Source of the DNA: Ylistrum balloti
Taxonomy: Eukaryota
Reading direction: 5' to 3'
NCBI RefSeq assembly: GCF_031769215.1
Contig: NW_026782257.1
Coordinates: 1 to 64,000 of the forward strand
Length of the DNA: 64,000 nucleotides
The notes beneath the pieces were generated by a model. The model ran no database searches, was not told where the DNA came from, and saw nothing but the letters and a program-made list of their open reading frames with translations. Numbering within the stretch: position 1 is the stretch's first letter; every line of letters begins with the position of its first letter. Positions 1 to 22,240 of this stretch are shown in pieces. A program made the translations under genes and the position numbers.

Positions 1-3000
1 TGTCTACTGAATTACCCGTACCTACAGAAATGCCTGTGTCTACTTAAATACTTCTGTACCTACAGAAGTACTCGCACCTATAGGAAATGCCCGTATCAAC
101 AGAAGTACCCGTGTCTACAGAAATGCCCGTATCTACAGAAGTACCCATGTCTAAAGAAATGCCCGTATCTACAGAAGTACCTGTGTCTACAGGAGAACCT
201 GTACCTTCTGAATTACCCGTACCTTTAGAAATGTCCGTGTCTTCAGAAGTACCCGTGCCTACAGCAATGCACGTTTCTACAGAAGTACCTGTACCTACAG
301 AAGTACCCGTACCTACAGAAATACCCTATGTCTACTGAATTACCCGTACCTACAGAAATGCCTGTGTCTACTTAAATACTTGTACCTACAGAAGTACTCG
401 CACCTATAGGAAATGCCCGTATCAACAGAAGTACCCGTGTCTACAGAAATGCCCGTATCTACAGAAGTATCCGTGTCTAAAAAATGCCCATACCTACAGA
501 AGTACCCGTGTCTACAGGAGTACCCGTACCTTCTGAATTACCCGTACCTTTAGAAATGTCCGTGTCTTCAGAAGTACCCGTACCTACAGAAATGGTCGTG
601 TCTACTGAAGTACCCGTACCTACAGAAGTGTCCGTGTCTACTGAAGTATCCGTTACTACAGAAGTACCCGTGTCTACTGAAGTACCTGTATCTACAGAAA
701 TATCCGTTCCTACAGAAATACCCTATGTCTACTGAAGTACCCGTGTCTACAGAAGAACCCGTACCTTCTGAATTACCCGTACCTTTAGAAATGTCCGTGT
801 CTTCAGAAGTACCCGTACCTACAGAAATGGCCGTGTCTACTGAAGTACCCGTACCTACAGCAATGCCCGAGTCTACTGAAGTACCTGTATCTACAGAAGA
901 ACCCATACCTACAGAAATATCCGTTCCTACAGAAATACCCTATGTCTACTGAAGTACCCGTGTCTATAGAAGAACCCGTACCTACAGAAATACCCTATGC
1001 CTACTGATTTATCCGTACCTACAGAAATGCCTGTGTCTACTTAAATACTCGTACCTACAGAAGTACTCGCACCTATAGAAATGCCCGTATGAACAGAAGT
1101 ACCCGTGTCTACAGAAATGCCTGTATCTACAGAAGTACCCGTGTCTAAAGAAATGCCCATACCTACAGAAGTACCCGTGTCTACTGAAGTACCCGCACCT
1201 ACAGAAGTGTCCGTGTCGACTGATGTATCCGTTACTACAGAAGTACCCGTGTCTACTGAAGTACTCGTACCTACAGAAGTGCCCATGTCTACTGAAGTAC
1301 CCATACCTACAGAAATTCACGTTTCTACTGAGATACCGTTACCTAAACAAGTACTGGTACCTACTGAAGTGCCAATACCAACAGAAAAACCCGTACCTAC
1401 AGAAGTACCCATACCAACAGTAATGCCCGTGTCTACTGGAGTATCCGTACCTACAAAAATACCCGAGTCTACTGAAGTACCTGTATCAACGGAAGAACCC
1501 GTACCTACAGAAATATCCGTACCTACAGAAATACCCTATGTCTACTGAAGTACCCGTGTCTACAGGGGAACCCGTACCTACTGAATTACCCGTACCTTTA
1601 GAAATGGCCGTGTCTTCAGAAGTACCTGTACCTACAGAAATGCCTGTGTCTACTTAAATACTCGTACCTACAGAAGTACCCGTACCTATAGGAAATGCCC
1701 GTATCAACAGAAGTACCCGTGTCTAAAGAAATGCCCTTACCTACAGAAATATCCATGTCTACCGAAGTACCCGTAACTATACAAGTACTGGTACCTACTG
1801 AAGTACCAATACTTACAGAAATATCCGTACCTACAGAAGTACCCGTACCTACAGAAATCCCCGTACCTACAGAAATACCCGTACCTACAGAAATGCACGT
1901 TTCTACTCAAGTACCGTTACCTAAACAAGTACTGGTACCTACTGAAGTACCAATACCAACAGAAATACCTGTACCTACAGAAGTACCCGCACCTACAGAA
2001 ATGCACGTTTCTACTGAAGTACCTAGACCTACAGAAGTACCTGTACCTACAGAAATGCCCGTACCTACAGTAGTACCCGAACCTACAGAAATACCCGTGT
2101 CTACTGAAATATCCATGTCTAAAGAAGTACCAGTGCCTACAGAAATGGCCGTGTCTACTGAAGTACCCGTACCTATAGCAATGCACGTTTCTACTTAAGT
2201 ACCTGTACCTACAGAAGTACCCGTACCTACAGAAATACCTTATGTCTACTGAATTACCCGTACCTACAGAAATGCCTGTGTCTACTTAAATACTCGTACC
2301 TACAGAAGTACTCGCACCTATTGGAAATGCCCGTATCAACAGAAGTACCCGTGTCTACAGAAATGCCCGTATCAACAGAAGTACCCGTGTCTAAAGAAAT
2401 GCCCTTACCTACAGAAATATCCATGTCTACCGAAGTACCCGTAACTATACAAGTACTGGTACCTACTGAAGTACCAATACTTACAGAAATATCCGTACCT
2501 ACAGAAGTACCCGTACCTACAGAAATCCCCGTACCTACAGAAATACCCGTACCTACAGAAATGCACGTTTCTACTGAAGTACCGTTACCTAAACAAGTAC
2601 TGGTACCTCCTGAAGTACCAATACCAACAGAAATACCTGTACCTACAGAAGTACCCGCACCTACAGAAATGCACGTTTCTACTGAAGTACCTAGACCTAC
2701 AGAAGTACCTGTACCTACAGAAATGCCCGTACCTACAGTAGTACCCGAACCTACAGAAATACCCGTGTCTACTGAAATATCCATGTCTAAAGAAGTACCA
2801 GTACCTACAGAAATGCCTGTGTCTACTTAAATACTCGTACCTAAAGAAGTACGCGTACCTACAGAAATGCCCGTGCCTACAGAAGTACCCGCACCTACAG
2901 AGAAACCCCTACCTACACAAATGCCTGTGTCTACTGAAGTACCCGTATCTAAAGAAGTACCCGTGTCTACAGAAATGCCCGTATCTACAGAAGTACCCGT

Positions 3001-4310
3001 GTCTACAGAAATACCCGTATCTACAGAAGTATCCGTGTCTAAAGAAATGCCCATACCTACAGAAATATCCATTTCTACTGAAGTACCTGTACCTACAGAA
3101 GTACCCGTGTCTACTGAAGTACCTGTATCTACAGAAGAACCCGTACCTACAGAAATATCCGTTCCTACAGAAATACCCTATGTCTACTGAAGTACCCGTG
3201 TCTACAGAAGAACCCGTACCTTCTGAATTACCCGTACCTTTAGAAATGTCCGTGTCTTCAGAAGTACCCGTACCTACAGAAATGGCCGTGTCTACTGAAG
3301 TACCCGTACCTACAGCAATGCACGTTTCTACTTAAGTACCTGTACCTACAGAAATACCTGATGTCTACTGAATTAGCCCTACCTACAGAAATGCTTGTGT
3401 CTACTTAAATACTCGTATCAACAGAAGTACCCGTGTCTACAGAAATGCCCGGATCTACAGAAGTACCCGTAACTATACAAGTACTGGTACCTACTGAAGT
3501 ACCAATTCTTACAGAAATACCCGTACCTACAGAAATACCCGTACCTACAGAAATGCACGTTTCTACTGAAGTACCGTTACCTAAACAAGTACTGGTACCT
3601 ACTGAAGTACCAATACCAACAGAAATACCTGTACCTACAGAAGTACCCGTACCTACAGAAATGCACGTTTCTACTGAAGTACCTAGACCTACAGAAGTAC
3701 CTGTACCTACAGAAATGCCCGTACCTACAGTAGTACCCGAACCTACAGAAATACCCGTGTCTACTGAAATATCCATGTCTAAAGAAGTACCAGTACCTAC
3801 AGAAATGCCTGTGTCTACTTAAATACTCGTACCTAAAGAAGTACGCGTACCTACAGAAATGCCCGTGCCTACAGAAGTACCCGCACCTACAGAGAAACCC
3901 CTACCCACACAAATGCCTGTGTCTACTGAAGTACCCGTATCTAAAGAAGTACCCGTGTCTACAGAAATGTCCGTACCTACAGAACTGCCCGTGTCTACTG
4001 AAGTATCCGTTACTACAGAAGTAACCGTGTCTACTGCAGTACTCGTACCTACAGAAGTGCCCGTGTCTACTGAAGTACCCGTACCTACAGAAATGCACGT
4101 TTCTACTAAGTACCGTTACCTAAATAAGTACTGGTACCTACTGAAGTACCAATACCAACAGAAAAACCCATACCTACAGAAGTACCCTACCAACAGTAAT
4201 GCCCGTGTCTACTGGAGTATCCGTACCTACAAAAATACCAGAGTCTACTGAAGTACCTGTATCAACGGAAGAACCCGTACCTACAGAAATATCCGTACGT
4301 ACAGAAGTAC
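1..4310. repeat. 18-bp minisatellite (consensus ~CCTACAGAAGTACCCGTA) with nested higher-order duplications; + frame reads PTEVPV/STEMPV repeats
   Basis: 18-nt periodicity throughout. Recurrent variant blocks, e.g. GTAACTATACAAGTACTGG at ~1772, ~2441 and ~3469. Recurrent in-frame stops (TCTACTTAA) and 1-bp frameshift units (ATACCCTATGTCTACTGA) break it into short ORFs. Confidence 0.95.
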
Positions 4311-4896
4311 CCCTACAACTTGAACATTTCAAAAATATACCTCCGAAAACACCGGAGTTTTTTCACGGACAGAAAGACGGACGAAAGAAAGGCGATTGCA
4401 AAATCTATAATTCTATACTGAAATACAGAGTTTGTTTGATTCCGTGTCAGTTGGGAAGTCGTTTAGAAATACACAAAATAAGAATAAAAAACGATAAAAT
4501 ATATTTTACGTAAATAAGATTTATTAAATAAGTATATCTTACATTAAAATTCAAATTCACACGTAAGTAAATATTCTCTGTCCATTTCAACCGAATACCA
4601 ATGGCATTGTTCCTGGCTCTGGCTCGTCTCCTTAAATGGAAGGCAACCAACTTATTGCACATAGGATGCTCGCTCTAGAAACATTCCTCTATCTCGTCTT
4701 TGTCAGTTAACCATTTGTTGCTTACAAACTGGCTGTCTATAACAATATTGTTTGGAAATTAATCATTTCGTTTTCGTCATTTTGTTCAGCAAATATTTCC
4801 ATGTTAGACAGTGAGAGATAGACAGAGAAATTGAGCTTCAAGGCAGACAATGTACAAGTAGATGAGTCGAATGTCCAGGGCGGAGCATGCGGTTGC

Positions 4897-5232
4897 TTAG
4901 TTTGAAGAAGAATCGGCTTCAGCAGGTGACGGAAGAGTTGGCTGCTCAGGGTCAGCTTTAATCGGAATAGGACTTGAAGGTGGCGGTGGTGGACATGGGT
5001 AGATTGGGTCATTGTCCCTGATCCAGCAAGTGCCTCTCACGTCTCTAGTGCAAATGGGGAAGGTGAATAAGATCTTCAGTCCACGTGGCGGTGGAGCAAG
5101 TCTCAGTCGATAGTACTTCTTGCCACAAGGTACTTGAGGTGGTATACCTTCCATTTCTTCTTCGGTCATGTAAGGATGGATTTTTGGTTTCCTACGACGT
5201 TTCAGACATTTCAGGAAGGCGAAACAGCCCAT
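4897..5232 (-). CDS. Intronless 111-aa ORF (MGCFAFLKCLKRRRKPKIHP...PPPPP...), cassette copy 1; function unknown
   Basis: ATG 5232, TAA 4897. N-terminal Met-Gly-Cys plus polybasic stretch. Upstream CRE cluster and a downstream AATAAA on the minus strand (4520-4525). Differences between copies are mostly synonymous. Confidence 0.55.
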   Translation of the reverse strand: MGCFAFLKCLKRRRKPKIHPYMTEEEMEGIPPQVPCGKKYYRLRLAPPPRGLKILFTFPICTRDVRGTCWIRDNDPIYPCPPPPPSSPIPIKADPEQPTLPSPAEADSSSN

Positions 5233-5284
5233 TATTGAAGTCTTTGAAAAATCGTGCGTGTGTTTGTTGATATTCAGGATGTCA

Positions 5285-5480
5285 ATTATGACGTCATACG
5301 TAGATACATAATCTATTGTGACGTCATCAGCTATATTTTGATCTCGTCATGACGTGATTTGATGTTTTGACGAAATGAAAAACAACGCTTTTCGAAGTCT
5401 TAAAACTGTAAGGCTATAATATACTGTTATACGTGTGTCAACATTACCGTGACGGAATGCCTGTTGTCAATGACGTTCAG
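5285..5480. promoter_or_regulatory. CRE/ATF site cluster upstream of the MGC ORF (repeated at +1702 and +3404)
   Basis: Full TGACGTCA palindromes at 5289 and 5319, palindrome CGTCATGACG at 5345, further TGACG half-sites at ~5368, ~5450 and ~5471. The region is locally CpG-rich. Confidence 0.55.
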
Positions 5481-5666
5481 TTAAAGTTTTAAAGTCTCTC
5501 CACTACGAACGACTGACAGGATCTCTGGCAATCCCTACCATAGTTGTCGTTCCTTAATGCTTCACGAATCAATCTCGGCCAAAGAATTTGACTTTGTAGT
5601 GGCAACGCAATTTGACTCTGGTATGATCACAAAAGAGCTAGGACATACTGGTCTTTACCAAGAGAA

Positions 5667-6215
5667 ATGTCAGTACCTACATCAATGCCCATGTCTACTG
5701 TAGTACCCGTATCTACAGAATTACCCATATCTACAGAAGTACCCGTGTCTACAGAAGTGCCCATGTTTTCTGAGGTACCCGTGTCTACAGAAGTGCCAAT
5801 GTCTACTGAAGTACCCGTGTCTACAGAAGTGCCCATGTCTACTGAAGTAGCCGTTCCTACAGAAGTACCCGTGCCTACAAAAATGTCAGTGTCTACTAAA
5901 GTGCCCATACCTACAGTAGTACGAGTACCTAAAGAAGTACCGGTATCTACTGAAGTACCGATACCTACAGATATACCCGCACCTACAGAAATTCCCGTAC
6001 GTACAGAAGTACCCCTACAACTTGAACATTTCAAAAATATACCTCCGAAAACACCGGAGTTTTTTCACGGACAGAAAGACGGACGAAAGAAAGGCGATTG
6101 CAAAATCTATAATTCTATACTGAAATACAGAGTTTGTTTGATTCCGTGTCAGTTGGGAAGTCGTTTAGAAATACACAAAATAAGAATAAAAAACGATAAA
6201 ATATATTTTACGTAA
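5667..6215 (+). other. 182-aa open frame: PTEV repeat fused to a unique basic tail (also 7369-7917 and the tail at 4199-4513); coding status uncertain
   Basis: The minisatellite frame is open into LEHFKNIPPKTPEFFHGQ...KIYFT* in all three copies; ATTAAA follows about 10 nt after the stop. Confidence 0.25.
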
Positions 6216-6598
6216 ATAAGATTTATTAAATAAGTATATCTTACATTAAAATTCAAATTCACACGTAAGTAAATATTCTCTGTCCATTTCAACCGAATAC
6301 CAATGGCATTGTTCCTGGCTCTGGCTCGTCTCCTTAAATGGAAGGCAACCAACTTATTGCACATAGGATGCTCGCTCTAGAAACATTCCTCTATCTCGTC
6401 TTTGTCAGTTAACCATTTGTTGCTTACAAACTGGCTGTCTATAACAATATTGTTTGGAAATTAATCATTTCGTTTTCGTCATTTTGTTCAGCAAATATTT
6501 CCATGTTAGACAGTGAGAGATAGACAGAGAAATTGAGCTTCAAGGCAGACAATGTACAAGTAGATGAGTCGAATGTCCAGGGCGGAGCATGCGGTTGC

Positions 6599-6934
6599 TT
6601 AGTTTGAAGAAGAATCGGCTTCAGCAGGTGACGGAAGAGTTGGCTGCTCAGGGTCAGCTTTAATCGGAATAGGACTTGAAGGTGGCGGTGGTGGACATGG
6701 ATAGATTGGGTCATTGTCCCTGATCCAGCAAGTGCCTCTCACGTCTCTAGTGCAAATGGTGAAGGTGAATAAGATCTTCAGTCCACGTGGCGGTGGAGCA
6801 AGTCTCAGGCGGTAGTACTTCTTGCCACAAGGTACTTGAGGTGGTATACCTTCCATTTCTTCTTCGGTCATGTAAGGATGGATTTTTGGTTTCCTACGAC
6901 GTTTCAGACATTTCAGGAAGGCGAAACAGCCCAT
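6599..6934 (-). CDS. Intronless 111-aa MGC ORF, cassette copy 2
   Basis: Same ORF; versus copy 1 I see 3 synonymous changes and 1 replacement (FTFP->FTFT). Confidence 0.55.
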   Translation of the reverse strand: MGCFAFLKCLKRRRKPKIHPYMTEEEMEGIPPQVPCGKKYYRLRLAPPPRGLKILFTFTICTRDVRGTCWIRDNDPIYPCPPPPPSSPIPIKADPEQPTLPSPAEADSSSN

Positions 6935-8207
6935 TATTGAAGTCTTTGAAAAATCGTGCGTGTGTTTGTTGATATTCAGGATGTCAATTATGACGTCATA
7001 CGTAGATACATAATCTATTGTGACGTCATCAGCTATATTTTGATCGCGTCATGACGTGATTTGATGTTTTGACGAAATGAAAAACAACGCTTTTCGAAGT
7101 CTTAAAACTGTAAGGCTATAATATACTGTTATACGTGTGTCAACATTACCGTGACGGAATGCCTGTTGTCAATGACGTTCAGTTAAAGTTTTAAAGTCTC
7201 TCCACTACGAACGACTGACAGGATCTCTGGCAATCCCTACCATAGTTGTCGTTCCTTAATGCTTCACGAATCAATCTCGGCCAAAGAATTTGACTTTGTA
7301 GTGGCAACGCAATTTGACTCTGGTATGATCACAAAAGAGCTAGGACATACTGGTCTTTACCAAGAGAAATGTCAGTACCTACATCAATGCCCATGTCTAC
7401 TGTAGTACCCGTATCTACAGAATTACCCATATCTACAGAAGTACCCGTGTCTACAGAAGTGCCCATGTCTTCTGAGGTACCCGTGTCTACAGAAGTGCCA
7501 ATGTCTACTGAAGTACACGTGTCTACAGAAGTGCCCATGTCTACTGAAGTAGCCGTTCCTACAGAAGTACCCGTGCCTACAAAAATGTCAGTGTCTACTA
7601 AAGTGCCCATACCTACAGTAGTACGAGTACCTAAAGAAGTACCGGTATCTACTGAAGTACCGATACCTACAGATATACCCGCACCTACAGAAATTCCCGT
7701 ACGTACAGAAGTACCCCTACAACTTGAACATTTCAAAAATATACCTCCGAAAACACCGGAGTTTTTTCACGGACAGAAAGACGGACGAAAGAAAGGCGAT
7801 TGCAAAATCTATAATTCTATACTGAAATACAGAGTTTGTTTGATTCCGTGTCAGTTGGTAAGTCGTTTAGAAATACACAAAATAAGAATAAAAAACGATA
7901 AAATATATTTTACGTAAATAAGATTTATTAAATAAGTATATCTTACATTAAAATTCAAATTCACACGTAAGTAAATATTCTCTGTCCATTTCAACCGAAT
8001 ACCAATGGCATTGTTCCTGGCTCTGGCTCGTCTCCTTAAATGGAAGGCAACCAACTTATTGCACATAGGATGCTCGCTCTAGAAACATTCCTCTATCTCG
8101 TCTTTGTCAGTTAACCATTTGTTGCTTACAAACTGGCTGTCTATAACAATATTGTTTGGAAATTAATCATTTCGTTTTCGTCATTTTGTTCAGCAAATAT
8201 TTCCATG

Positions 8208-8636
8208 TTAGACAGTGAGAGATAGACAGAGAAATTGAGCTTCAAGGCAGACAATGTACAAGTAGATGAGTCGAATGTCCAGGGCGGAGCATGCGGTTGC
8301 TTCGTTTGAAGAAGAATCGGCTTCAGCTGGTGACGGAAGAGTTGGCTGCTCAGGGTCAGCTTTAATCGGAATAGGACTTGAAGGTGGCGGTGGTGGACAT
8401 TGGTAGATTGGGTCATTGTCCCTGATCCAGCAAGTGCCTCTCACGTCTCTAGTGCAAATGGGGAAGGTGAATAAGATCTTCAGTCCACGTGGCGGTGGAG
8501 CAAGTCTCAGTCGATAGTACTTCTTGCCACAAGGTACTTGAGGTGGTATACCTTCCATTTCTTCTTCGGTCATGTAAGGATTAATTTTTGGTTTCCTACG
8601 ACGTTTCAGACATTTCAGGAAGGCGAAACAGCCCAT
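8208..8636 (-). CDS. 142-aa MGC ORF, cassette copy 3, with a hydrophobic C-terminal extension
   Basis: The TAA of copies 1 and 2 is GAA here, adding EATACSALDIRLIYLYIVCLEAQFLCLSLTV. Confidence 0.5.
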   Translation of the reverse strand: MGCFAFLKCLKRRRKPKINPYMTEEEMEGIPPQVPCGKKYYRLRLAPPPRGLKILFTFPICTRDVRGTCWIRDNDPIYQCPPPPPSSPIPIKADPEQPTLPSPAEADSSSNEATACSALDIRLIYLYIVCLEAQFLCLSLTV

Positions 8637-8998
8637 TATTGAAGTCTTTGAAAAATCGTGCGTGTGTTTGTTGATATTCAGGATGTCAATTATGACGTCA
8701 TACGTAGATACATAATCTATTGTGACGTCATCAGCTATATTTTGATCGCGTCATGACGTGATTTGATGTTTTGACGAAATGAAAAACAACGCTTTTCGAA
8801 GTCTTAAAACTGTAAGGCTATAATATACTGTTATACGTGTGTCAACATTACCGTGACGGAATGCCTGTTGTCAATGACGTTCAGTTAAAGTTTTAAAGTC
8901 TCTCCACTACGAACGACTGACAGGATCTCTGCCAATCCCTACCATAGTTGTCGTTCCTTAATGCTTCACGAATGAATCAATCTCGGCCAAAGAATTTG

Positions 8999-10350
8999 AA
9001 TTATAATAATAAATGACTTTATTTAAGAGTCGATAACACTTTGAGTACAAGACTCTTCTAACAAGTGGTCGACAGTAAAATGTACAATATATACAACATT
9101 AAGATTACAGCATCACATATGATATAAAAATCACAAATATCACAGTAAACTAGCATAATCATGAAGGACTAAGAAGTACATCAATAAAACAAATGTAATG
9201 ATAAAGGCACATAGTGAAGAGGTATATAAAACGGTTATAGAGCGACTAATAATATAATAAAAGGACTAAATTAGCGAGGTTATGTAGGGGATACAGGACT
9301 GGTAATTAAAACAATTAATTAGCAACATTCATAAAGGTACCATATTATCTTGGGGCTAAAATAAGACTGGCATAAAAATGTGAATCTAGGGTGGTAAATT
9401 GGAGATGAATTTTTCACAATGAAATTTAAAAGTTGGTAAGGTTCCACATTGTCTGATATTTTCTGGAAGCTGATTCCACAAAGTTGGTCTAGTTTATAGG
9501 AAGGAATTTCTAATCTTTTCAGTTTTGTGTTTAGGTATGATATAGTTACCAGCAGTAGATGCCCTAGTTTGTCTACTGTGTACACTGGACATAAGCACAT
9601 TACAGTCCAAGTAGTTTGGACACAGTTTGTTAGCTACTTTACACATTAGTATACATTCATTGTAGTTCACTCTTTTGCTAAAAGGTAACCATTTGAGTTT
9701 AGTGAATAGTTCATCCCCTGATACAGAGTAGTCAGCATCCATAATTATACGTAAAACTCTTTTCTGTAATATCTCTAGTTTTTTAATATATGTCTGAGAA
9801 CAATGTCCCCAAATATTTGAACAATAATCTAGGTAAGGTAGAATGAAACAGTTAAAATAGGTGATTCTTGATGAAACAGGTAAGAACTTTTTAATTCTGT
9901 ATAACTGATATATTTTGAAATTGACCTTTTTGATGAAATCCTGGACATGTTTGTTCCAAGTAAGGGTATCATAAAATACACACACCTAGGAGTTTTTCAT
10001 GTTTAACATTTTCCAATGTAAGATCACCAGAATCAGTACATTCAATACATAATTCCTTTGCATTTTTTTGTTTTTTCTGTTTACTGCCTACAAGCATAAC
10101 TTTGGTTTTGTCTTTATTTATAACCATTTTGTTTGTTTTACACCATTTTTTTCAAATTTACAAAGTCAGTGCGCAAACATGTTTCAATAACCGTAGTACA
10201 TTTGTCAGTTTTCTGCAATGTTGAATCATCAGCATACATGTAAAATTCCCAATGTTTAGAATGAAGAGGCATGTCATTGACATCAATTAAAAACATCAGT
10301 GGCCCAAGTATTGAGCCCTGGGGTACACCAGTTGTAATTTCACAGGAATT
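8999..10350 (-). mobile_element. 5'-truncated, decayed CR1/L2-like non-LTR retrotransposon (RT domain to 3' end)
   Basis: Minus-strand translation gives NSCEITTGVPQGSILGPLMFLIDVNDMP...MYADDS. The downstream ORF 9494-9985 has the typical YFNCFILPYLDYCSNIWG...LKWLP tail. The 3' end has AATAAA and a short (TTA)n tail at ~9000; there are stops and a frameshift near 10020-10080. Confidence 0.9.
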
Positions 10351-15212: not shown

Positions 15213-18200
15213 TCAAGGTGTCTGTGGGTTGCTATCCAGCCAGTCTTCTATCACACTAGTAATGTCATGGCGTTCCATGTCTGGATGCTGAAGGAGTTCG
15301 AGTAATTGGGCCAGAGTGAGGCGATGACTTCGACCTAGGTCCATAAGTAGCTGGTAGGCTGGCTCCTTGTGTGTGTCATAAAGGGCGATTTTATCTCCAG
15401 TGAGACCCAGTAATCCTGTAACAAAGACCAGTGAGATTTATTTTTAATTCATAACACAACATAATCAGTATTATCCATACTGGAAATAATTGGAAATAAA
15501 AACTGATTTATAAATCTTACCCCAAAAACATTAATTGCACAAAAGTTAGATGAAGTCGGTGAAGTAGTAAATATGGGTAACTGTGACCTAAATAATATAT
15601 TGGTGTAGCATTCCTCAGTGTTGTATCGTATCACCAGAGTGATACCATAAAATACTGAACTATATCCAAAACTCGCCATAATCCTGTTAAAATAACTAAA
15701 TAACCATCAGAAGACATGCATACCTCCAAGGAGCTTCCAGTCATTACCAAAGGTAGTTTCCAGGTGCAGCTTCTGGCTGATCGTCCTCAGTATCATATGA
15801 GGTAACTCGTTCATATACTTTGCCATCTGTAACAGGTTACACAACAGATTGTTATATTTCCAACATAACTGTATATTTTGATTCAGTTTGATTTAGGAAG
15901 CTATCTTTCCTCTTCAAAGAATCCATCATCAGTTTAGGGTTGAACCTCATTATCTCACATCTTATAACTTTAAGACCTGATATACTTTAAAGTATTTTGT
16001 TAGTCTCAGCCATACTTCACACTAATCATTCAAACTTTGCTTAGATTGAATACTTGGATAACTCGAAGTCTTCAAATGGTTGTACCAACTTTAAGATAAC
16101 GAGGTTTGACTGTAAAACATTCAAAACATTCAAATACTTTACTGTAGTTTTATTAATGCTATTATAACATCTTAATCTTCATTGACCATTTTCAGGACAA
16201 CAGAAAAGTTGAACTAAAATATGACACTAAACACAGATTTATTTCTCAATGGATACTGACCATGTTCGGTAGCCATATTTTGATCTTGCGATGATTGTCA
16301 AGCTTCTCGCTGCAGCATATCTGTCGTTTACTCAGGTCAAGCACATGCATGTCTGAATGGTGCTGGTTGATGAAAAGACATCTGTCCTGCAGTGGACAAG
16401 ATGGACCTAACACATACTTGACCTCTGACCCCAGTGTAGCCTTACATACTTTAAGCAACCACTGGTACAATACATAAGGCTTGGAAGCTGTTTCTGACCT
16501 GCAAACCAAAACATGTTTGAGGATGATGTAGTATAGAAAGTGTATGACAACAACTTCTGGTGTATTAAAATTTTGTAATTTTTGTTCAAATTGTATTAAA
16601 ATTTTGTCATTTTTGTTCAAACTGTATGTGGGAAAGACAATAAAACAAAGGTCTGTTCTGTTGACAGTAATATCTCAACCCTTAAATAAGAGTTTGGGTT
16701 TTGGATGGCCAAGCCTCATGCTGACCAGCCAAACTCCTACACTTGGGTAGAGATCTCCTTACCATCAGAGAAGACCATAGTAATCTATTAATCTTTGCTA
16801 GGGTACCTACCTAGCAAGGTTGATCTGTATTCGATCACGAAGCTTGTGATGGTGAAGGGTGATGTCGTATCCAAGGTGTGACAGACAACAGGAAGATGGA
16901 CCTATCATGGCAAGGTTGTGAATATCACTGCTGTTGTTGATAGCAAAGGCCAGCTGGTAAAACACCAAACTTGATGTATGCATGCGAAAGTCTACATATA
17001 AACACAGTTCTGTTGGTTCTGTTGTAGGAGGTGCTAGTGTGCTCTGGTCCGTAATCACATATGGCACTAGGTAATTCACTCCTCCTGATTCAGCCCCAAA
17101 TGATTTTTGACGGAATATAAGTCCAAATATTTCCAGGAGATGCGTGATTTTTTCAACCGAGTGGCTGTGACACTGCTGTGAGATGATATCTGTGAGGTCT
17201 TCTCCTGTTATGAGGCCAGTGCTGAGCCCCCGAACCCCTTTCTGGCGAGCCCCCTCCAAAGATTGCACTCCTTTGAGCTGTTGCAGAAAGACATTGACAT
17301 TCTGCACACAGTCCAGAAGAACTTTGGGATCAATGAACAAAAACTTATCAAGGTGTAGAACATGGGGTAAAGTCAATGGCGCCGCCTCTGAAACCATGGA
17401 AACAATTGTCAACATCAAAATATCTCCTACATGTATATCATCACTATTTGATGGCAGTTCTTTTCTCAAACAATTTTTCTAAAACATTATAAGATGAAAA
17501 ACATAAAGATTATCTGTAACTAATATATACTGTTAGGTCTAGTTGAACTATATATTGTACCTATAGCTTGTTAATATTAAAGTGGAACAAATTTCCTAGT
17601 TATATGTATATTTTTAAAGTGTAGCAGTTACCCTGACCACAATATAGTGCTATGGATCACTTGGATTAGGTTGATGATAACCGACATATTCACCTGGTAA
17701 TTAACATAATCTGGGGAATTCATAATTATTTTCAGACTTCAGGCCACCCTACATCTGTTGTTGTTATAAATCTGAAACTACAACATCTCGTAATGACTGG
17801 CCATCCCAACCCACATTTATAATACTACTAAATTTATAACGTCTGTACCCTATGTTATCCATCATACAACTCATTATCAGCAATATCATAATCTAATCGT
17901 CTCTCATGTGCGATTCACTTAATTGAATTTTGCAACTGAATTAAAATCCTTTAATCAATATTCATGGATTAGAACAAGGATAATATACACCAATTATTTC
18001 CATAGCATGATTGATAAACAAACAAGAGGCCCATATGTATCGCTTATCTGGATTTGCTTTGCTGAAATGCTTCATAAGATTAAGGAAAGGAAAATCTAAA
18101 TATCCCAATTCTCTGTCCCTTTCCAGGCATCAGTCAAACTATTCATACTTCAGACTAAATCATTCTTACAGGTTACGTAGGATTTTAAAGGAATTGCCAC

Positions 18201-21200
18201 ATTTCCAATATTGAGCCCTGCACCTCCTGCCCCATGGGGCCGGGACAAACTGTACATACAAACCCAATTCCCCTTCATCCAAGAATGCTTCAGACCACAA
18301 TTTAAGCAAAATCCATCATTCCTACTGGAGTAAGATTTTAAAGACTTTCCTCTAATCCCCTACTGGGCTCTGCCCTTCCTGCCCCATGGGGCTGAGACCC
18401 ATCATTTATACAAAATTGATTCCCTTTAAACCAAGAATGCTTCAGACCACATTTGGGCAAAATACATCATTCCTACTGGAGTAGGATTTTCAGTGTTTGC
18501 TCTTTTTCCCCTATTGAACCCCACCACTCTCACCCCATAGGACCCCAAGTAAAAGGGTTTATATAAAATTTGTTCCCCTTCCCCAAAGAATCCTTCTTTA
18601 AATAATCATAGTCAAAATCTGCTTCGTTGATCATGACTAGTAGCGAGCTGTAGAAAAAGTTGACAGACAGATGACGGACACCACGGTATGCCAATAGCTC
18701 ATGGCCCTTTGGGGCAGGTGAGCTAAAAAAAAAACAAAGTTAGCAGGGATTCACGATACCTCCCAGTCCTGCATTTCTACTTCTGATCTAAATTTGTGGT
18801 CAAGGGTGACCTTTGCCTTTAAACAGTCAAAATAATAAGGTGTAGAGAGACCTTGGTGGGACGAGTATAAATTAAATCTGTGCATGTGTTCACGGATGTA
18901 TAATCATAAACACAGGGAAGTTATAATAATCCCTTCCTTATGTAAGCTGGGGGTATAATTACTACATACTTCAACAGCAGATTATCCTGAATCTATCTGT
19001 TCAGAACGTACAGTTACATAGAGTGCTAAGTAAACTCACAGCTGATTTCATTGTGATTCATCTTTGCATTGCTACTGAAACAGACACTCGAGACTGAATT
19101 AATTTAGCAATCAGAAATGGGGTTTCCTTGTGTGTTTAAAGGAAGACTGTACTTTGAATTTACAATGAGGTTTAAAATTTATTTAAAGTTAATCACCTGT
19201 ATTTATGACACTGTAATTATGTAGATGTGAATGAAAGCAGGTTTACACTTAATGAATGTATAGTTAGATTGAATTATATCTTACTTGAAGAGAGAATTTC
19301 GCCAACATTTTTTAAGTCCGTCCAGACTATCTGCTGGAGGTCCTGACCTCCTCCTGGTACCTCGTCCTGAAACATGATTGAGAATTCTACCTCGTCAATG
19401 AACAGTTTCTGTTTGCCAGTCCTCACTGACTCAAATTGAAGCATCATTGCCACAGATGGCAACGATATCTTCTGCTTGAGTGTCATCTCACCAAGAACCT
19501 TCCAAAGTCCACGCTGAAGTCGACGACTTGCATCGCTAGTCTTGGCACCCTCAACTCCAGGGCAAAACAGTTCTGGCATGGGCACATTGTACTTCTGAAT
19601 CTGCTGGCCGAATGGCAGATAAAAAAGTGTGCGTACTTCATCTACGCCCACAGAGGCATCATTGTTCAATAATCCATAGGTCAGAATTGGGCATTCATAA
19701 CCATCAAAACACCTTATAGTATGAATCACATTTTGTAGACGCTGAATCTCTGTATGCGTAGATGTCACAACTTTTGCCCCATCGAATGTCAACACAAATA
19801 TGCTTGTCCTTGTGAATAAATACTGACAACAATGATGGAAAAATTTGTCGTCTGGGCTAAATCTATCATCAGGCATTATAAAGAACTCTACGTTGATGGA
19901 GCCTTTATGGATGAAGGAACTTGCGTCATCTCGGTCTCTAAATATGTCACTTTTTGTTAGAGATTCATTGCTGGCATGTAACCTTGAAGATGGCTCATCG
20001 TTAAGAAGATAATCAAATGAAGACCAGGATGTAAAACTTATGGCGCCCTCTCGGTCCATTCCCATGGTGCACTTAATACATTGATACAAGCCATTGTTAC
20101 CATCAGAAGACACCATGCCTGGCATTAACAGTCGAGCGAGGGCTCGAGCTTCACTACCACACAGAAACACACGTACTTTGGGCAGATTAATTGTTCTGTT
20201 TAATTCAAACAGGTCAACATTAATATCCTGTGGGTCCTGTGGATCGTTACTCTCAGACAGTGGTGTCACACGGTAGCTTTTGCCACCACGTAGTACTGGA
20301 TCACACAAGACAGGGCGTGCCTTTCCTGAGTTGTGAGATGGCAGGCGTTGATATGCCGGCATCTTGGGTGGTTCAGAGGCCAGAGGAAGACCAGGGACTG
20401 ATGGATAATGTACATCTGGGTCTGGCAAGGACGGGGTTGGAGGAAATATATTCTGGGACAGACCTTCAGGACGTTGTAGAACTATTCGTACCGTAGTCTC
20501 CTTAGCCAAGAGGTCCGGTATACTGCTGGCCTATGGACAGATAAACACTTTTAAATCAAGGCTCAATCAAATGCCAAGTTTCCTAATGTAGTGTCAGATG
20601 GTGGTCCTTACAATATCAGTGTCAGTTCTGTCACCATTTAAGGACAGAAGCTTGACTTCCAGCATAAATTTTATGATTTATGTCCTTAGGGCTATGGCAG
20701 GAATAACTTAGCCTAAGGGGCTCTTGAAGGATCAGTGGTCATGGTGATCAAAAACATAAGGTTATGACTTACCTCCCTTGGGCTCTGGAGGGGCTGCCCA
20801 TTGACAGAGCGAATCCAGTCACCAACCATGAGCTTACCATCTGCGGGTCCATCTGGCGTGATACACTCCACCAGAGTGTACAGGTCATCAGCGTTCTTAA
20901 ATTACAAACATAAGTAAGGTTAAACAAGTACAGATATATTGTACAGCTTATTCTAAACTTATTGTACAGCTTATTCTAAACTTATTCATCAGAAGTAAAG
21001 TTCATATTGAGTGATAACATTTGTTCTGGACCTAACAGAAAATTAATGAAATTCCGAGTAAGATTGCATTTACATCCTGCGGATACAGTACAGTTTTAGG
21101 AGTAGTCTGATTATATATCAATACTGACCACAACCTTTTGCTTACCTTTGACATTTTGACTTTGAGTTTGAAGCCAAAGGAGCCTCTAGCTCCACGTGTG

Positions 21201-22240
21201 AGAGACACTGTCTTTGTGATGGGATCCCAATGAATGAAGTGTGGGAACCGTAGCAAGTCATTAGCATTGGTGCTTGGTCTCACCAACAGATGGTTACTCA
21301 TGGTTGGAGGGAGAGAGCTGCATGTACGACCATTGATGTCAGTAATAGCTTGTGTCCTGCTATCTACTGTTGGAAGGGATGTAGTCCGATTTTCCTCGCA
21401 TGTACCTGACCCAAGACCAGTGCTGTCATGGAATGGTCGGCTGTCTTGTGACTGATGCCCCTCCAGTCCCTGTAAGAGAGGCTCTGACTCGACAGGGCGA
21501 CGTTTACTATCAGAACCCTTACGCATACCTGTACAGGACCGACAACTACTGTTGGACACCTGGTCCCGACTTCTTTTGTTGCTGATGCTGACTAGAGAAC
21601 AGACGATGACCTCTGTGATGGTGGTGGACAGACTTGACAAGAGTCCCCACAGTTGTGTTGGGGTAAGTGAGGTAACGTCCTGACGATTGATACACAAGAT
21701 ACGGTCAAGCAGCTGCAGGACATCACCCTGACCGAGACAGCATTCTGGTTTAACCTTAGTCACTATTGAAAAAGTCTCGTTGTTACCCTGTCAACACATG
21801 GTTTCAGCTCAATGAAAATATTGTATTATAACTTTCTTTATGGACAAAAAATAGACATAGATTTCCCAAAACAATTGTTTTTATTTTCTTTTATTTTTTT
21901 TTTTTCAAATCCATTTTTCAGAACAAGTGAAGAAGTAGTTATGTGTGTTGTGTATCAATGGGAGAAATACTGTGACAACCAATATATGAATATTTGACTG
22001 TACAAAATAACATCATCCAATTTACTGAAAATTATTACATTTTATTATAAGATAAATTGCTTAAACTATGCTGAGGTTGATGACCTTGACCTGTACCTGG
22101 ATAATGTCGACCTTGATGCCTAGTTTTCCACTGCTGGTTTTGGTGAGGCTGATGCGCCTTGTGTAGGACCAGAGTACCCGATCTGGATCGGTCTTGAGTA
22201 TTTTGATGGCTTGGTGGATGTCATTGGGGATGGCACCCAT
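15213..22240 (-). CDS. PDZ-PDZ / degenerate Roc-COR / death-domain protein, 1152 aa, 9 coding exons: 22240-22097, 21787-21146, 20895-20773, 20530-19285, 18851-18760, 17478-16811, 16498-16261, 15826-15724, 15415-15213
   Basis: All junctions are GT-AG with matching phases (0,0,0,1,0,2,0,1), 3459 nt in total, and an in-frame stop lies 3 codons before the ATG. PDZ1: RRISLTKTSSGKLGIKV...DRILCINRQDV. PDZ2: KTVSLTRGARGSFGFKL...GDWIRSVNGQP. Roc-like: HHCCQYLFTRTSIFVLTFD...PILTYG. COR: FIDPKVLLD...LLEIFGLIF...YLVPY. Death domain: NDWKLLGGLLGL...PAYQLL...LTLAQLLELLQHPDMERHDI. Confidence 0.85.
18021..18727 (-). mobile_element. Non-autonomous Helentron-like (HINE) element with ~153-bp internal tandem repeats, intronic
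   Basis: Termini AACAAGAGGCCC and TAGCTCA...TGAGCTAAAA (hairpin), an ACAG microsatellite near one end, and internal repeat CAAGAATGCTTCAGACCACA at ~18280 and ~18433. Confidence 0.65.

What the first reader, a model, noticed from the sequence alone, without database searches (positions are those of the whole stretch)
15213..22240. Unfamiliar ROCO-family architecture: PDZ-PDZ-Roc-COR-death domain
Seen: nine phase-consistent exons give 1152 aa with two PDZ-like domains, a Pro-rich linker (PPTPSLPDPDVHYPSVPGLP), a Roc-like and COR-like region, and a C-terminal death domain. The ORF track shows only fragments; a 92-nt exon at 18851-18760 is needed to restore phase. Known: characterised animal ROCO proteins (LRRK1/2, DAPK1, MFHAS1) use LRR, ankyrin or kinase modules; DAPK1 ends in Roc-COR-DD, but none has PDZ domains. 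Inference: a kinase-free scaffold linking PDZ-bound membrane proteins to death-domain (innate immune or apoptotic) signalling. I do not recognise this combination as described.
Basis: partly seen in the sequence, partly recalled or inferred. Interest (0 to 1): 0.85.

Follow-up and report, generated by a model that had tools for sequence, protein, structure and literature searches.

The report
PDZ-PDZ, dead-Roc, COR, death-domain scaffold
This scallop gene encodes a conserved but unstudied relative of the LRRK2/DAPK1 (ROCO) proteins in which two PDZ domains and a death domain flank a Roc-COR core whose GTP-binding motifs are all missing, so it most likely works as a fixed adaptor, not a switch.

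Summary
The gene is real and lies on the minus strand at 22240-15213. The correct model has eight GT-AG exons and 1091 aa, not nine exons and 1152 aa. It is letter-for-letter the RefSeq protein 'uncharacterized protein LOC132553878 [Ylistrum balloti]'. Four scallop orthologues and an intronless Argopecten cDNA contig lack them, and the direct splice 19285>17387 keeps phase without them.

On the spliced protein both PDZ domains and the death domain pass Pfam cut-offs. Pfam sees nothing in the middle 570 residues. AlphaFold models (pLDDT about 81) match LRRK1/LRRK2 Roc plus the start of COR-A (Z 17-18). They also match C. tepidum Roco and LRRK1/2 COR (Z 9-12), in the same order as LRRK2 1329-1866.

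None of 36 family members has a P-loop, DxxG or NKxD motif, yet non-synonymous change is far below synonymous change in every domain.

Named family members are bivalves and gastropods, plus one sea urchin protein with the same domain order (hhalign E 8e-34). All are annotated as uncharacterised. No paper found describes a PDZ-ROCO.

Verdict: a new variant of a known kind, and the proposed function is inferred only. The same reader separately noted the pseudo-GTPase point on this window (s1-234468); I did not find the architecture noted on other DNA.

The parts
22097..22240 (-). Exon 1 (coding part): start codon at 22240, aa 1-48. Holds the N-terminal MG..P motif and the first strand of PDZ1, including its KLGI carboxylate-binding loop.
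   Evidence: tblastn of the Argopecten orthologue. GT donor after 22097. cDNA block ends at 22096/22097.
21146..21787 (-). Exon 2, aa 49-262: rest of PDZ1 (to about 21596), a Ser/Arg-rich linker, and the start of PDZ2 (from about 21208, with its SFGF loop).
   Evidence: AG acceptor before 21787 and GTAAGC donor after 21146. Pfam PDZ 26.1 bits on aa 30-96.
20773..20895 (-). Exon 3, aa 263-303: core of PDZ2.
   Evidence: Pfam PDZ_6 and PDZ on this exon alone. 97.7% identical to Argopecten. Splice sites.
19285..20530 (-). Exon 4, aa 304-719: end of PDZ2 (to about 20468), the Pro-rich linker, the pseudo-Roc G-domain (about 20185-19478, aa 419-654) and the first helices of COR-A (19477-19285).
   Evidence: AF2 model pLDDT 80.7. 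Foldseek and VIA best matches are LRRK1, LRRK2 (residues 1329-1587) and MbRoco2 RocCORdC. No P-loop, DxxG or NKxD motif.
16811..17387 (-). Exon 5, aa 719-911: rest of COR-A (to about 17053) and the first part of COR-B.
   Evidence: The 19285>17387 splice reproduces the RefSeq protein exactly and matches the cDNA block 17392-16806. COR fold match to CtRoco 3dpt, Z 12.1 over 223 residues.
16261..16498 (-). Exon 6, aa 911-990: C-terminal part of COR-B, with conserved Cys and Pro residues (the 'LGPxCPL' motif).
   Evidence: tblastn. Splice sites. Family alignment. COR match extends to model residue 275, which is aa 990.
15724..15826 (-). Exon 7, aa 991-1025: first helices of the death domain.
   Evidence: tblastn. 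Death-domain fold match covers model residues 277-367.
15213..15415 (-). Exon 8, aa 1025-1091 plus the stop codon (15215-15213): rest of the death domain.
   Evidence: Pfam Death on this exon and on the spliced protein, 28.8 bits. Family profile against p75NTR DD E 5e-14 and MyD88 DD E 4e-11. VIA p75NTR DD Z 13.3, rmsd 1.6.
18760..18851 (-). Not part of the gene by the available evidence: it is intronic sequence next to a high-copy repeat.
   Evidence: Absent from the RefSeq-identical model, from four scallop orthologues and from the cDNA contig. High-copy repeat at 18200-18799.

Best explanation
The locus encodes a 1091-aa cytoplasmic adaptor of the ROCO superfamily with the order PDZ1, PDZ2, pseudo-Roc, COR-A, COR-B, death domain.

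Shown here:
- the gene structure;
- the four domain types;
- co-linearity of residues 419-990 with LRRK2 Roc-COR;
- loss of every GTP-binding motif across the family;
- strong purifying selection on all domains;
- conservation of the architecture in bivalves, gastropods and a sea urchin.

Inferred mechanism:
- The Roc-like domain no longer binds or hydrolyses GTP, because its P-loop is reduced to a two-residue turn. It serves as a fixed structural partner of COR.
- COR-B dimerises the protein, as it does in bacterial Roco and LRRK2.
- The two PDZ domains keep canonical carboxylate-binding loops (KLGI, and an SFGF whose F-G-F is invariant or nearly so). They tether the dimer to C-terminal tails of membrane or cortical proteins.
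- The p75NTR/MyD88-type death domain recruits other death-domain proteins, so a PDZ-bound partner is coupled to an innate-immune or cell-death assembly without any kinase or GTPase step.
For: Gene model: eight GT-AG exons, 100% identical to RefSeq LOC132553878. Exon boundaries match an intronless orthologous cDNA contig.

PDZ x2 and Death pass Pfam cut-offs. The family DD profile hits p75NTR and MyD88 DDs at E 5e-14 and 4e-11.

Roc:
- AF2 model pLDDT 80.7, pTM 0.83, with G-domain topology.
- Top Foldseek hits are LRRK1, MbRoco2, CtRoco and LRRK2.
- VIA gives LRRK1 Z 17.8 (244 aa) and LRRK2 Z 17.2 (236 aa, rmsd 2.8, residues 1329-1587). Plain small GTPases score Z 13-15 over about 165 aa.
- Protein-language-model neighbours are all Roc/Ras/COR-A clusters.

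COR:
- Foldseek top nine hits are all Roco/LRRK1.
- VIA gives CtRoco COR Z 12.1 (223 aa), LRRK1 Z 10.0 and LRRK2 1584-1866 Z 8.9.
- Pfam COR-A hits are weak: 3 of 20 members (best E 0.002) and the sea urchin member (E 4.5e-5).
- The model's secondary structure fits the published N-COR and C-COR description (PMC6337361).

Pseudo-GTPase: 0 of 36 members have GxxxxGK[ST]; no conserved DxxG or NKxD at the expected places; beta1 ends at G24 and alpha1 starts at A27 of the model.

Constraint: pN is 0.02-0.13 against pS 0.58-0.82 in every domain, Ylistrum versus Argopecten.

Conservation of the architecture.

COR-B as the dimerisation device: PMC6337361.
Against: No sequence profile links the middle domain to Roc. 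Pfam Roc/Ras give no hit even at E 10, and family profiles find no GTPase in the PDB by sequence. All COR-A hits are below Pfam's cut-off. The Roc and COR assignments therefore rest on predicted, not solved, structures.

No RNA run of this species was available, so the junctions rest on orthology and on the RefSeq model.

Nothing here tests ligand binding by the PDZ domains, dimerisation, nucleotide binding, or the partners of the death domain. The sea urchin member shows only one detectable PDZ.
Confidence: 0.55

Rival explanations
1. The Roc-like domain is still a switch. It binds a nucleotide or another small ligand in a non-canonical way, and that ligand controls COR conformation and death-domain exposure.
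For: The domain is under strong purifying selection (pN 0.059 against pS 0.64). It also keeps family-specific invariant residues around the former nucleotide pocket: C23-G24, N112, D120 at the position of the DxxG aspartate, C133-C134, E160 and R163.
Against: The P-loop is shortened to a two-residue turn with no Lys or Ser/Thr. There is no NKxD/THxD guanine-specificity motif and no DxxG glycine in any of 36 members.
Confidence: 0.12
2. The middle region is not a ROCO homologue. It would be another G-domain lineage (for example Rag/Gtr-like) followed by unrelated winged-helix and alpha/beta domains that only resemble COR.
For: There is no Pfam Roc hit. Rag/Gtr GTPases reach Z 15 on the G-domain alone. 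Sequence identity to Roco structures is only 9-17%.
Against: Only Roco proteins match beyond the G-domain. They do so co-linearly across both models: LRRK2 1329-1587, then 1584-1866. COR-A is the only non-Death Pfam family that more than two members hit. The nearest ESM-Atlas shapes are mollusc Roc-COR(-Death) clusters, with TM 0.73 over 276 residues.
Confidence: 0.05
3. The long ORF is an annotation artefact that fuses a PDZ gene with a separate Roc-COR-DD gene.
For: No RNA evidence from this species was available. The only run found is genomic DNA.
Against: A 3515-nt intronless contig from an Argopecten run carries the whole 1093-aa ORF from the PDZ domains to the DD. The same order is found in more than 20 proteins from bivalves, gastropods and a sea urchin. 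Several of these sit on 3.4-4.5 kb contigs sized like a full-length mRNA.
Confidence: 0.02
4. The architecture is the same but the role is different: a DAPK1-like pro-apoptotic or autophagy adaptor, or a neuronal/synaptic PDZ scaffold, and not an innate-immune adaptor.
For: DAPK1 is the only characterised animal ROCO that ends in Roc-COR-DD (PMC6337361). The best death-domain match is the neurotrophin receptor p75NTR. PDZ scaffolds are typical of synapses and cell junctions (general knowledge).
Against: The death domain matches MyD88, IRAK4 and Pelle DDs almost as well (Z 12-13). Mollusc ROCO proteins are often combined with TIR or Death modules (PMC9334734). Nothing here discriminates between the roles.
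Confidence: 0.25

Closest known systems
DAPK1 (death-associated protein kinase 1), the 'group 3' ROCO proteins
   Same: A Roc-COR tandem followed directly by a C-terminal death domain, with no LRR; found only in metazoans (PMC6337361). An ESM-Atlas cluster named DAPK1-like is among the nearest shapes for the COR-DD model.
   Different: DAPK1 has an N-terminal kinase, a calmodulin-binding segment and ankyrin repeats, and its Roc binds GTP (PMC3458246 abstract). This protein has two PDZ domains instead, no kinase, and a Roc without nucleotide-binding motifs.
LRRK1 / LRRK2
   Same: Best structural matches. Roc plus COR-A plus COR-B are co-linear with LRRK2 1329-1866 and LRRK1 620-1327.
   Different: No ARM, ANK, LRR, kinase or WD40 domains. 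Only 11-12% identity. P-loop, DxxG and THxD motifs are absent. PDZ and death domains are added.
Prokaryotic Roco proteins (C. tepidum Roco, M. barkeri Roco2)
   Same: RocCOR fold: 4wnr at E 1.2e-6 with TM 0.49/0.48, and 3dpt COR at Z 12.1 over 223 residues. COR-B is the known dimerisation device (PMC6337361).
   Different: These are active GTPases with an N-terminal LRR and no PDZ or death domain.
Mollusc Roc-COR proteins fused to Death or TIR modules (Aplysia 'ROCO' TLR/MyD88-like proteins)
   Same: Found in the same phylum, with the same Roc-COR-Death module. These are the nearest predicted shapes: TM 0.73 for Roc-COR-A and 0.55 for COR-DD. They are described as candidate immune signalling proteins (PMC9334734).
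   Different: Those proteins are detected by the Pfam Roc and COR models, so they look canonical. They carry LRR, TIR or EF-hand domains, not PDZ, and PDZ is not mentioned in that paper.
p75NTR / MyD88 / IRAK4 / Pelle death domains
   Same: The C-terminal domain is a typical six-helix death domain: p75NTR Z 13.3 at rmsd 1.6 with 25% identity, and MyD88 Z 12.9.
   Different: It is attached to a ROCO core, not to a receptor, a TIR domain or a kinase. One orthologue is mis-annotated as MyD88 (Mactra antiquata), although my Pfam scan of it found PDZ and Death but no TIR domain.
Pseudo-GTPases in general (for example the p190RhoGAP pseudo-G domains and CENP-M; from my own knowledge, not tested here)
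   Same: The G-domain fold is kept while the G1-G5 motifs are lost, and the domain is used as a structural or scaffolding module.
   Different: I found no paper that pairs 'pseudoGTPase' with Roco among the listed results. A dead Roc inside a conserved Roc-COR tandem appears to be undescribed.

Membership tests
ROCO (Roc-COR) superfamily | Ras-like G-domain (Roc) fold | tested here: met
   The AF2 model (pLDDT 80.7) has G-domain topology. VIA gives LRRK1 Z 17.8 and LRRK2 Z 17.2; Foldseek gives E 8e-7 to 1e-5 to LRRK1, MbRoco2 and CtRoco.
ROCO (Roc-COR) superfamily | COR-A and COR-B immediately C-terminal to Roc, co-linear with known RocCOR tandems | tested here: met
   Model 1 ends on LRRK2 residue 1587 and model 2 starts on 1583/1584 and runs to 1866. 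CtRoco COR Z 12.1 over 223 aa. Foldseek's top nine hits are all Roco/LRRK1.
ROCO (Roc-COR) superfamily | Sequence-profile membership (Pfam Roc PF08477, COR-A PF16095 at the gathering score) | tested here: not met
   No Roc hit at E up to 10. COR-A appears only below its cut-off: best E 0.002 in 3 of 20 molluscan members, and 23.8 bits against 35.3 in the sea urchin member.
ROCO (Roc-COR) superfamily | Functional GTPase motifs G1 (GxxxxGK[ST]), G3 (DxxG), G4 (N/T-K/H-x-D) | tested here: not met
   0 of 36 family members carry a P-loop, and there is no conserved DxxG or NKxD at the expected positions. Actual GTP binding cannot be tested with these tools.
DAPK1 group of ROCO proteins | Kinase domain and ankyrin repeats N-terminal to RocCOR, death domain C-terminal | tested here: not met
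   The death domain is present, but Pfam finds only PDZ domains N-terminal to Roc and no kinase or ankyrin repeats.
PDZ domain proteins | Two PDZ domains above Pfam's gathering score, each with a carboxylate-binding loop | tested here: met
   PDZ1 26.1 bits (aa 30-96) and PDZ2 33.2 bits (aa 242-308) against a cut-off of 23.2. KLGI and SFGF loops are visible in the alignment; in the PDZ2 loop G253 and F254 are invariant and F252 is nearly invariant.
Death domain superfamily | Six-helix death domain by sequence and by fold | tested here: met
   Pfam Death 28.8 bits against 22.6. The family profile hits p75NTR DD at E 5e-14. VIA Z 13.3 at rmsd 1.6 over 84 aa.
Pseudo-GTPase (no nucleotide binding) | Experimentally shown absence of nucleotide binding | not testable with these tools
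   Only motif loss and the predicted two-residue beta1-alpha1 turn are shown.

The most novel reading that the evidence does not exclude
PDZ-pseudoRoc-COR-DD is an old, separate class of animal ROCO protein. It would predate the split of molluscs and echinoderms and be absent from vertebrates. Its RocCOR core works without any nucleotide, as a permanently 'locked' dimeric platform that couples PDZ-bound membrane proteins to death-domain (Myddosome-like) assemblies. It would be the first natural GTPase-dead ROCO and a natural experiment on what RocCOR does apart from GTP hydrolysis.
Probability: 0.35. Interest if true: 0.7.

Novelty: new variant of a known kind. Interest (0 to 1): 0.55.

Why it matters
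ROCO proteins are defined as GTPases. How the Roc-COR tandem controls LRRK2 and DAPK1 is a long-running question in Parkinson's disease and cell-death research. Here the RocCOR fold is kept under strong purifying selection while every nucleotide-binding motif is gone, in a family conserved across molluscs and a sea urchin. That suggests the tandem has a nucleotide-independent scaffolding role that can be studied on its own.

The family also adds a fourth animal ROCO architecture (PDZ in place of LRR, ankyrin or kinase). It gives a name to a set of 'uncharacterized / PDZ domain-containing' proteins, one of them mis-annotated as MyD88. It also fits the picture of death-domain and ROCO diversification in marine invertebrate immunity.

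The practical value is limited until partners and expression are known.

Tried and rejected
1. Pfam on single exons gave only sub-threshold PDZ and Death hits and nothing for the middle exons. On the spliced protein it was informative for PDZ and Death only.

2. HMMER profiles of the Roc part (A1, A3) against PDB sequences found nothing meaningful; the only hit was a Septin-4 coiled-coil peptide at E 0.27.

3. A simple splice-site scoring script left several junctions ambiguous. I replaced it with orthologue-guided mapping.

5. The RNA-seq check was not possible. The only run holding the locus is genomic DNA (contigs co-linear with the introns), so no junction could be read in this species.

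6. The search for homologous proteins with the Roc-to-DD family profile (A5) added no new taxa, because the word pre-filter capped the candidates.

7. The locus of P0004 could not be fetched as DNA (file too large). Only its gene list was seen, with a PDZ exon upstream of the Roc-like exon.

8. N-myristoylation of the conserved N-terminal Met-Gly was considered. Residues after Gly2 vary and often do not fit the usual pattern, so I do not claim it.

9. A ZU5-UPA module before the death domain (as in ankyrin, UNC5 and PIDD) was considered and rejected. The pre-DD region matches COR, and UNC5 matches only through its death domain.

10. No residue-level structural alignment was available. Equating family-invariant G24 with the first P-loop glycine of LRRK2 is inferred from aligned ranges only.
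Full report
**1. What is in the sequence**

The window has eukaryotic, intron-rich structure. On the minus strand between 22240 and 15213 lie eight open stretches whose translations look like parts of one protein. Scanned one by one, they gave only sub-threshold Pfam hits: PDZ twice and Death once. The two large middle pieces (418 aa at 19277-20530 and 223 aa at 16810-17478) gave nothing.

**2. Gene model**

A profile of the 418-aa exon and its first four relatives (A1) was run with HMMER against 1.8 billion representatives. It found 43 proteins, many of them full length.

- The Argopecten irradians orthologue (XP_069140792.1 and identical Logan sequences, 1093 aa) maps onto the window in eight pieces.
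- Reading the junctions gave eight exons, all with GT..AG introns: 22240-22097, 21787-21146, 20895-20773, 20530-19285, 17387-16811, 16498-16261, 15826-15724 and 15415-15213.
- Their translation is 1091 aa and letter-for-letter identical to RefSeq 'uncharacterized protein LOC132553878 [Ylistrum balloti]' (P0052). The window therefore comes from that scallop and the gene is already annotated, but without a name.
- It is 88-89% identical to the Pecten maximus and Mizuhopecten yessoensis orthologues and 86% identical to the Argopecten one.

**3.

The extra 183 nt (61 aa) keep the frame, but they are not needed, because 19285>17387 is in phase too.

- The insert is absent from all four scallop proteins.
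- It is absent from a 3515-nt Logan contig (SRR19746226) that carries the complete 1093-aa ORF without introns, so that contig is cDNA. It aligns to the window in eight blocks whose ends coincide with my exon ends, and nothing aligns at 18851-18760 or 17478-17388.
- The only public run that holds the locus is genomic. Its 4.5-kb and 5.7-kb contigs run straight through the introns, so no junction could be checked in this species.
- That run does show a high-copy repeat in intron 4, at 18200-18799 (summed contig depth 126-360 against 10-13). The supposed 92-nt exon abuts it.

**4. PDZ and death domains**

On the spliced protein Pfam gives PDZ1 at aa 30-96 (26.1 bits), PDZ2 at aa 242-308 (33.2 bits; cut-off 23.2) and Death at aa 1015-1084 (28.8 bits; cut-off 22.6).

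- The carboxylate-binding loops read KLGI (PDZ1) and SFGF (PDZ2). In the PDZ2 loop G253 and F254 are invariant in 20 sequences and F252 is nearly invariant.
- A family profile of the C-terminal part hits the death domains of p75NTR (E 5e-14), MyD88 (4e-11), NRADD and IRAK4.
- The modelled domain superposes on p75NTR DD at Z 13.3, rmsd 1.6 Å over 84 residues, and on MyD88 DD at Z 12.9.

**5. The middle 570 residues**

Sequence methods fail here. There is no Pfam hit at E up to 10 apart from weak COR-A (3 of 20 members, best E 0.002), and no PDB sequence hit. Protein-language-model neighbours of aa 405-720 are all Roc/Ras/COR-A clusters (score 0.90, a lead only).

I folded two pieces with family alignments.

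*Residues 405-720 (36 sequences; pLDDT 80.7, pTM 0.83)*
- The model shows a G-domain topology followed by a helical extension.
- Foldseek's best PDB hits are LRRK1, M. barkeri Roco2 RocCORdC (TM 0.49/0.48 over 322 columns), C. tepidum RocCOR and LRRK2, ahead of Rab and Rap GTPases.
- VIA gives LRRK1 Z 17.8 (244 aligned) and LRRK2 Z 17.2 (236 aligned, rmsd 2.8, residues 1329-1587). Plain small GTPases reach Z 13-15 over only about 165 residues.

*Residues 716-1091 (20 sequences; pLDDT 80.9)*
- This is the published description of N-COR and C-COR (PMC6337361).
- Foldseek's top nine hits are all Roco COR or LRRK1 (E 8e-6 to 1e-3).
- VIA gives CtRoco COR Z 12.1 (223 aligned), LRRK1 Z 10.0 and LRRK2 1584-1866 Z 8.9.

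The two models therefore map end to end onto LRRK2 1329-1866. In the ESM Atlas the nearest shapes are mollusc clusters carrying Pfam Roc plus COR-A (TM 0.73, 276 aligned) and Roc plus COR-A plus Death (TM 0.55). I conclude that the core is a very divergent Roc-COR tandem.

**6. A dead GTPase**

None of the 36 aligned family members has GxxxxGK[ST] or even a loose [AG]xxxxGK at the G1 position.

- The conserved sequence there is (V/I)-x-C-G-S/N-E-A. In the model beta1 ends at G24 and alpha1 starts at A27, so the phosphate-binding loop is reduced to a two-residue turn.
- At the G3 position the family has P/x-D-(D/E)-x-F-F-H-x-C-C. An acidic residue is kept, but not the DxxG glycine.
- At G4 it has T/S-Y/C-G-L-L instead of NKxD/THxD.
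- The sea urchin member likewise reads '...VIMGSNSENVAEQL' at G1.
- The domain is not decaying. Between Ylistrum and Argopecten pN is 0.059 against pS 0.64 for the pseudo-Roc. Values are similar for COR-A, COR-B and the DD, and PDZ2 is the most constrained (pN 0.02). Synonymous sites are near saturation, so the ratios are only approximate.

**7. Distribution and annotation**

Named members come from these groups:
- Bivalves: Ylistrum, Pecten, Mizuhopecten, Argopecten, Pinctada, Saccostrea, Mactra, Mya, Potamilus.
- Gastropods: Aplysia, Plakobranchus, Elysia, Biomphalaria, Pomacea, Babylonia, Haliotis.

All are 'uncharacterized', 'hypothetical' or 'PDZ domain-containing'. The Mactra one is mis-named MyD88.

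One cluster holds Strongylocentrotus purpuratus XP_030828250.1 (1127 aa). It has PDZ, a weak COR-A hit (E 4.5e-5) and Death in Pfam. It aligns with the molluscan Roc-to-DD profile over 646 columns at hhalign probability 99.9%, E 8e-34. The architecture is thus shared by molluscs and an echinoderm. No vertebrate, arthropod or other named taxon appeared among the 43 hits. The unnamed Logan, ENA and JGI sequences could not be assigned to a taxon.

**8. Literature**

- Reviews of ROCO proteins list three topologies: LRR-RocCOR, LRR-RocCOR-kinase and the DAPK1 group with a death domain. They do not mention PDZ (PMC6337361; occurrence counts).
- An Aplysia immune-gene survey reports Roc-COR combined with TIR, LRR, EF-hand or Death modules as possible novel signalling proteins, again without PDZ (PMC9334734).
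- Searches for ROCO with molluscs, or for pseudoGTPase with Roco, turned up nothing closer.
- The library covers open-access papers only.

**9. Mechanism**

Shown: the architecture, the fold assignments, the motif loss, the selective constraint and the conservation.

Inferred:
- The pseudo-Roc acts as a fixed partner of COR.
- COR-B dimerises the protein, as in CtRoco and LRRK2 (PMC6337361).
- The PDZ domains bind C-terminal tails of membrane or cortical proteins.
- The death domain nucleates or joins a death-domain assembly of the MyD88/IRAK/p75NTR type.

I put about 0.55 on this adaptor reading as a whole. The architecture itself I hold at about 0.9.

The main rivals are a non-canonical ligand-controlled switch (0.12) and a different biological role with the same parts (0.25). 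A non-ROCO origin (0.05) and an annotation fusion (0.02) are unlikely.

**10. Verdict**

It is a new variant of a known kind (ROCO). It is unstudied and of moderate interest to people working on LRRK2/DAPK1 mechanism and on invertebrate death-domain signalling.

Two other notes on this genome describe further unusual Roc-COR genes (s1-262760, s1-254269). I did not test them.

Noticed in passing
window 18200-18799 (intron 4 of the gene): A high-copy interspersed repeat. Summed contig depth in the only DNA run is 126-360, against 10-13 in the flanks, with many short contigs and loose ends. Translations show repeated '...PHGAGGAG...'-like units.
   Followed up: partly
window 500-4500 and 5600-8000: Long minisatellite-like arrays open in several frames on both strands (repeating 'EVPVSTEVPVPTE'-type units). 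They are interleaved with three near-identical copies of a 149-180-aa minus-strand ORF at about 4900-5346, 6602-7048 and 8211-8750. Other notes of this scan already cover this region.
   Followed up: no
window 15677-21101: There are 18 single-base differences and no indels between the window and the contigs of the public DNA run X1, probably another individual or haplotype. Three fall in the pseudo-Roc exon (19967, 19988, 20402).
   Followed up: no
window 22240-22226 and alignment A2, columns 1-40: The protein starts Met-Gly-x-x-Pro in most bivalve and gastropod full-length members. That could be an N-myristoylation site, but the following residues vary and often do not fit the usual pattern.
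   Followed up: partly
window 9497-9985 (minus strand): A 163-aa open frame whose text looks like the C-terminal part of a retroelement reverse transcriptase. I did not scan it.
   Followed up: no
P0014 (Mactra antiquata KAL4226970.1): This 1418-aa family member is named 'MyD88' in GenBank. My Pfam scan of it found PDZ and Death domains but no TIR domain, so the name appears to be an annotation error driven by death-domain similarity.
   Followed up: partly
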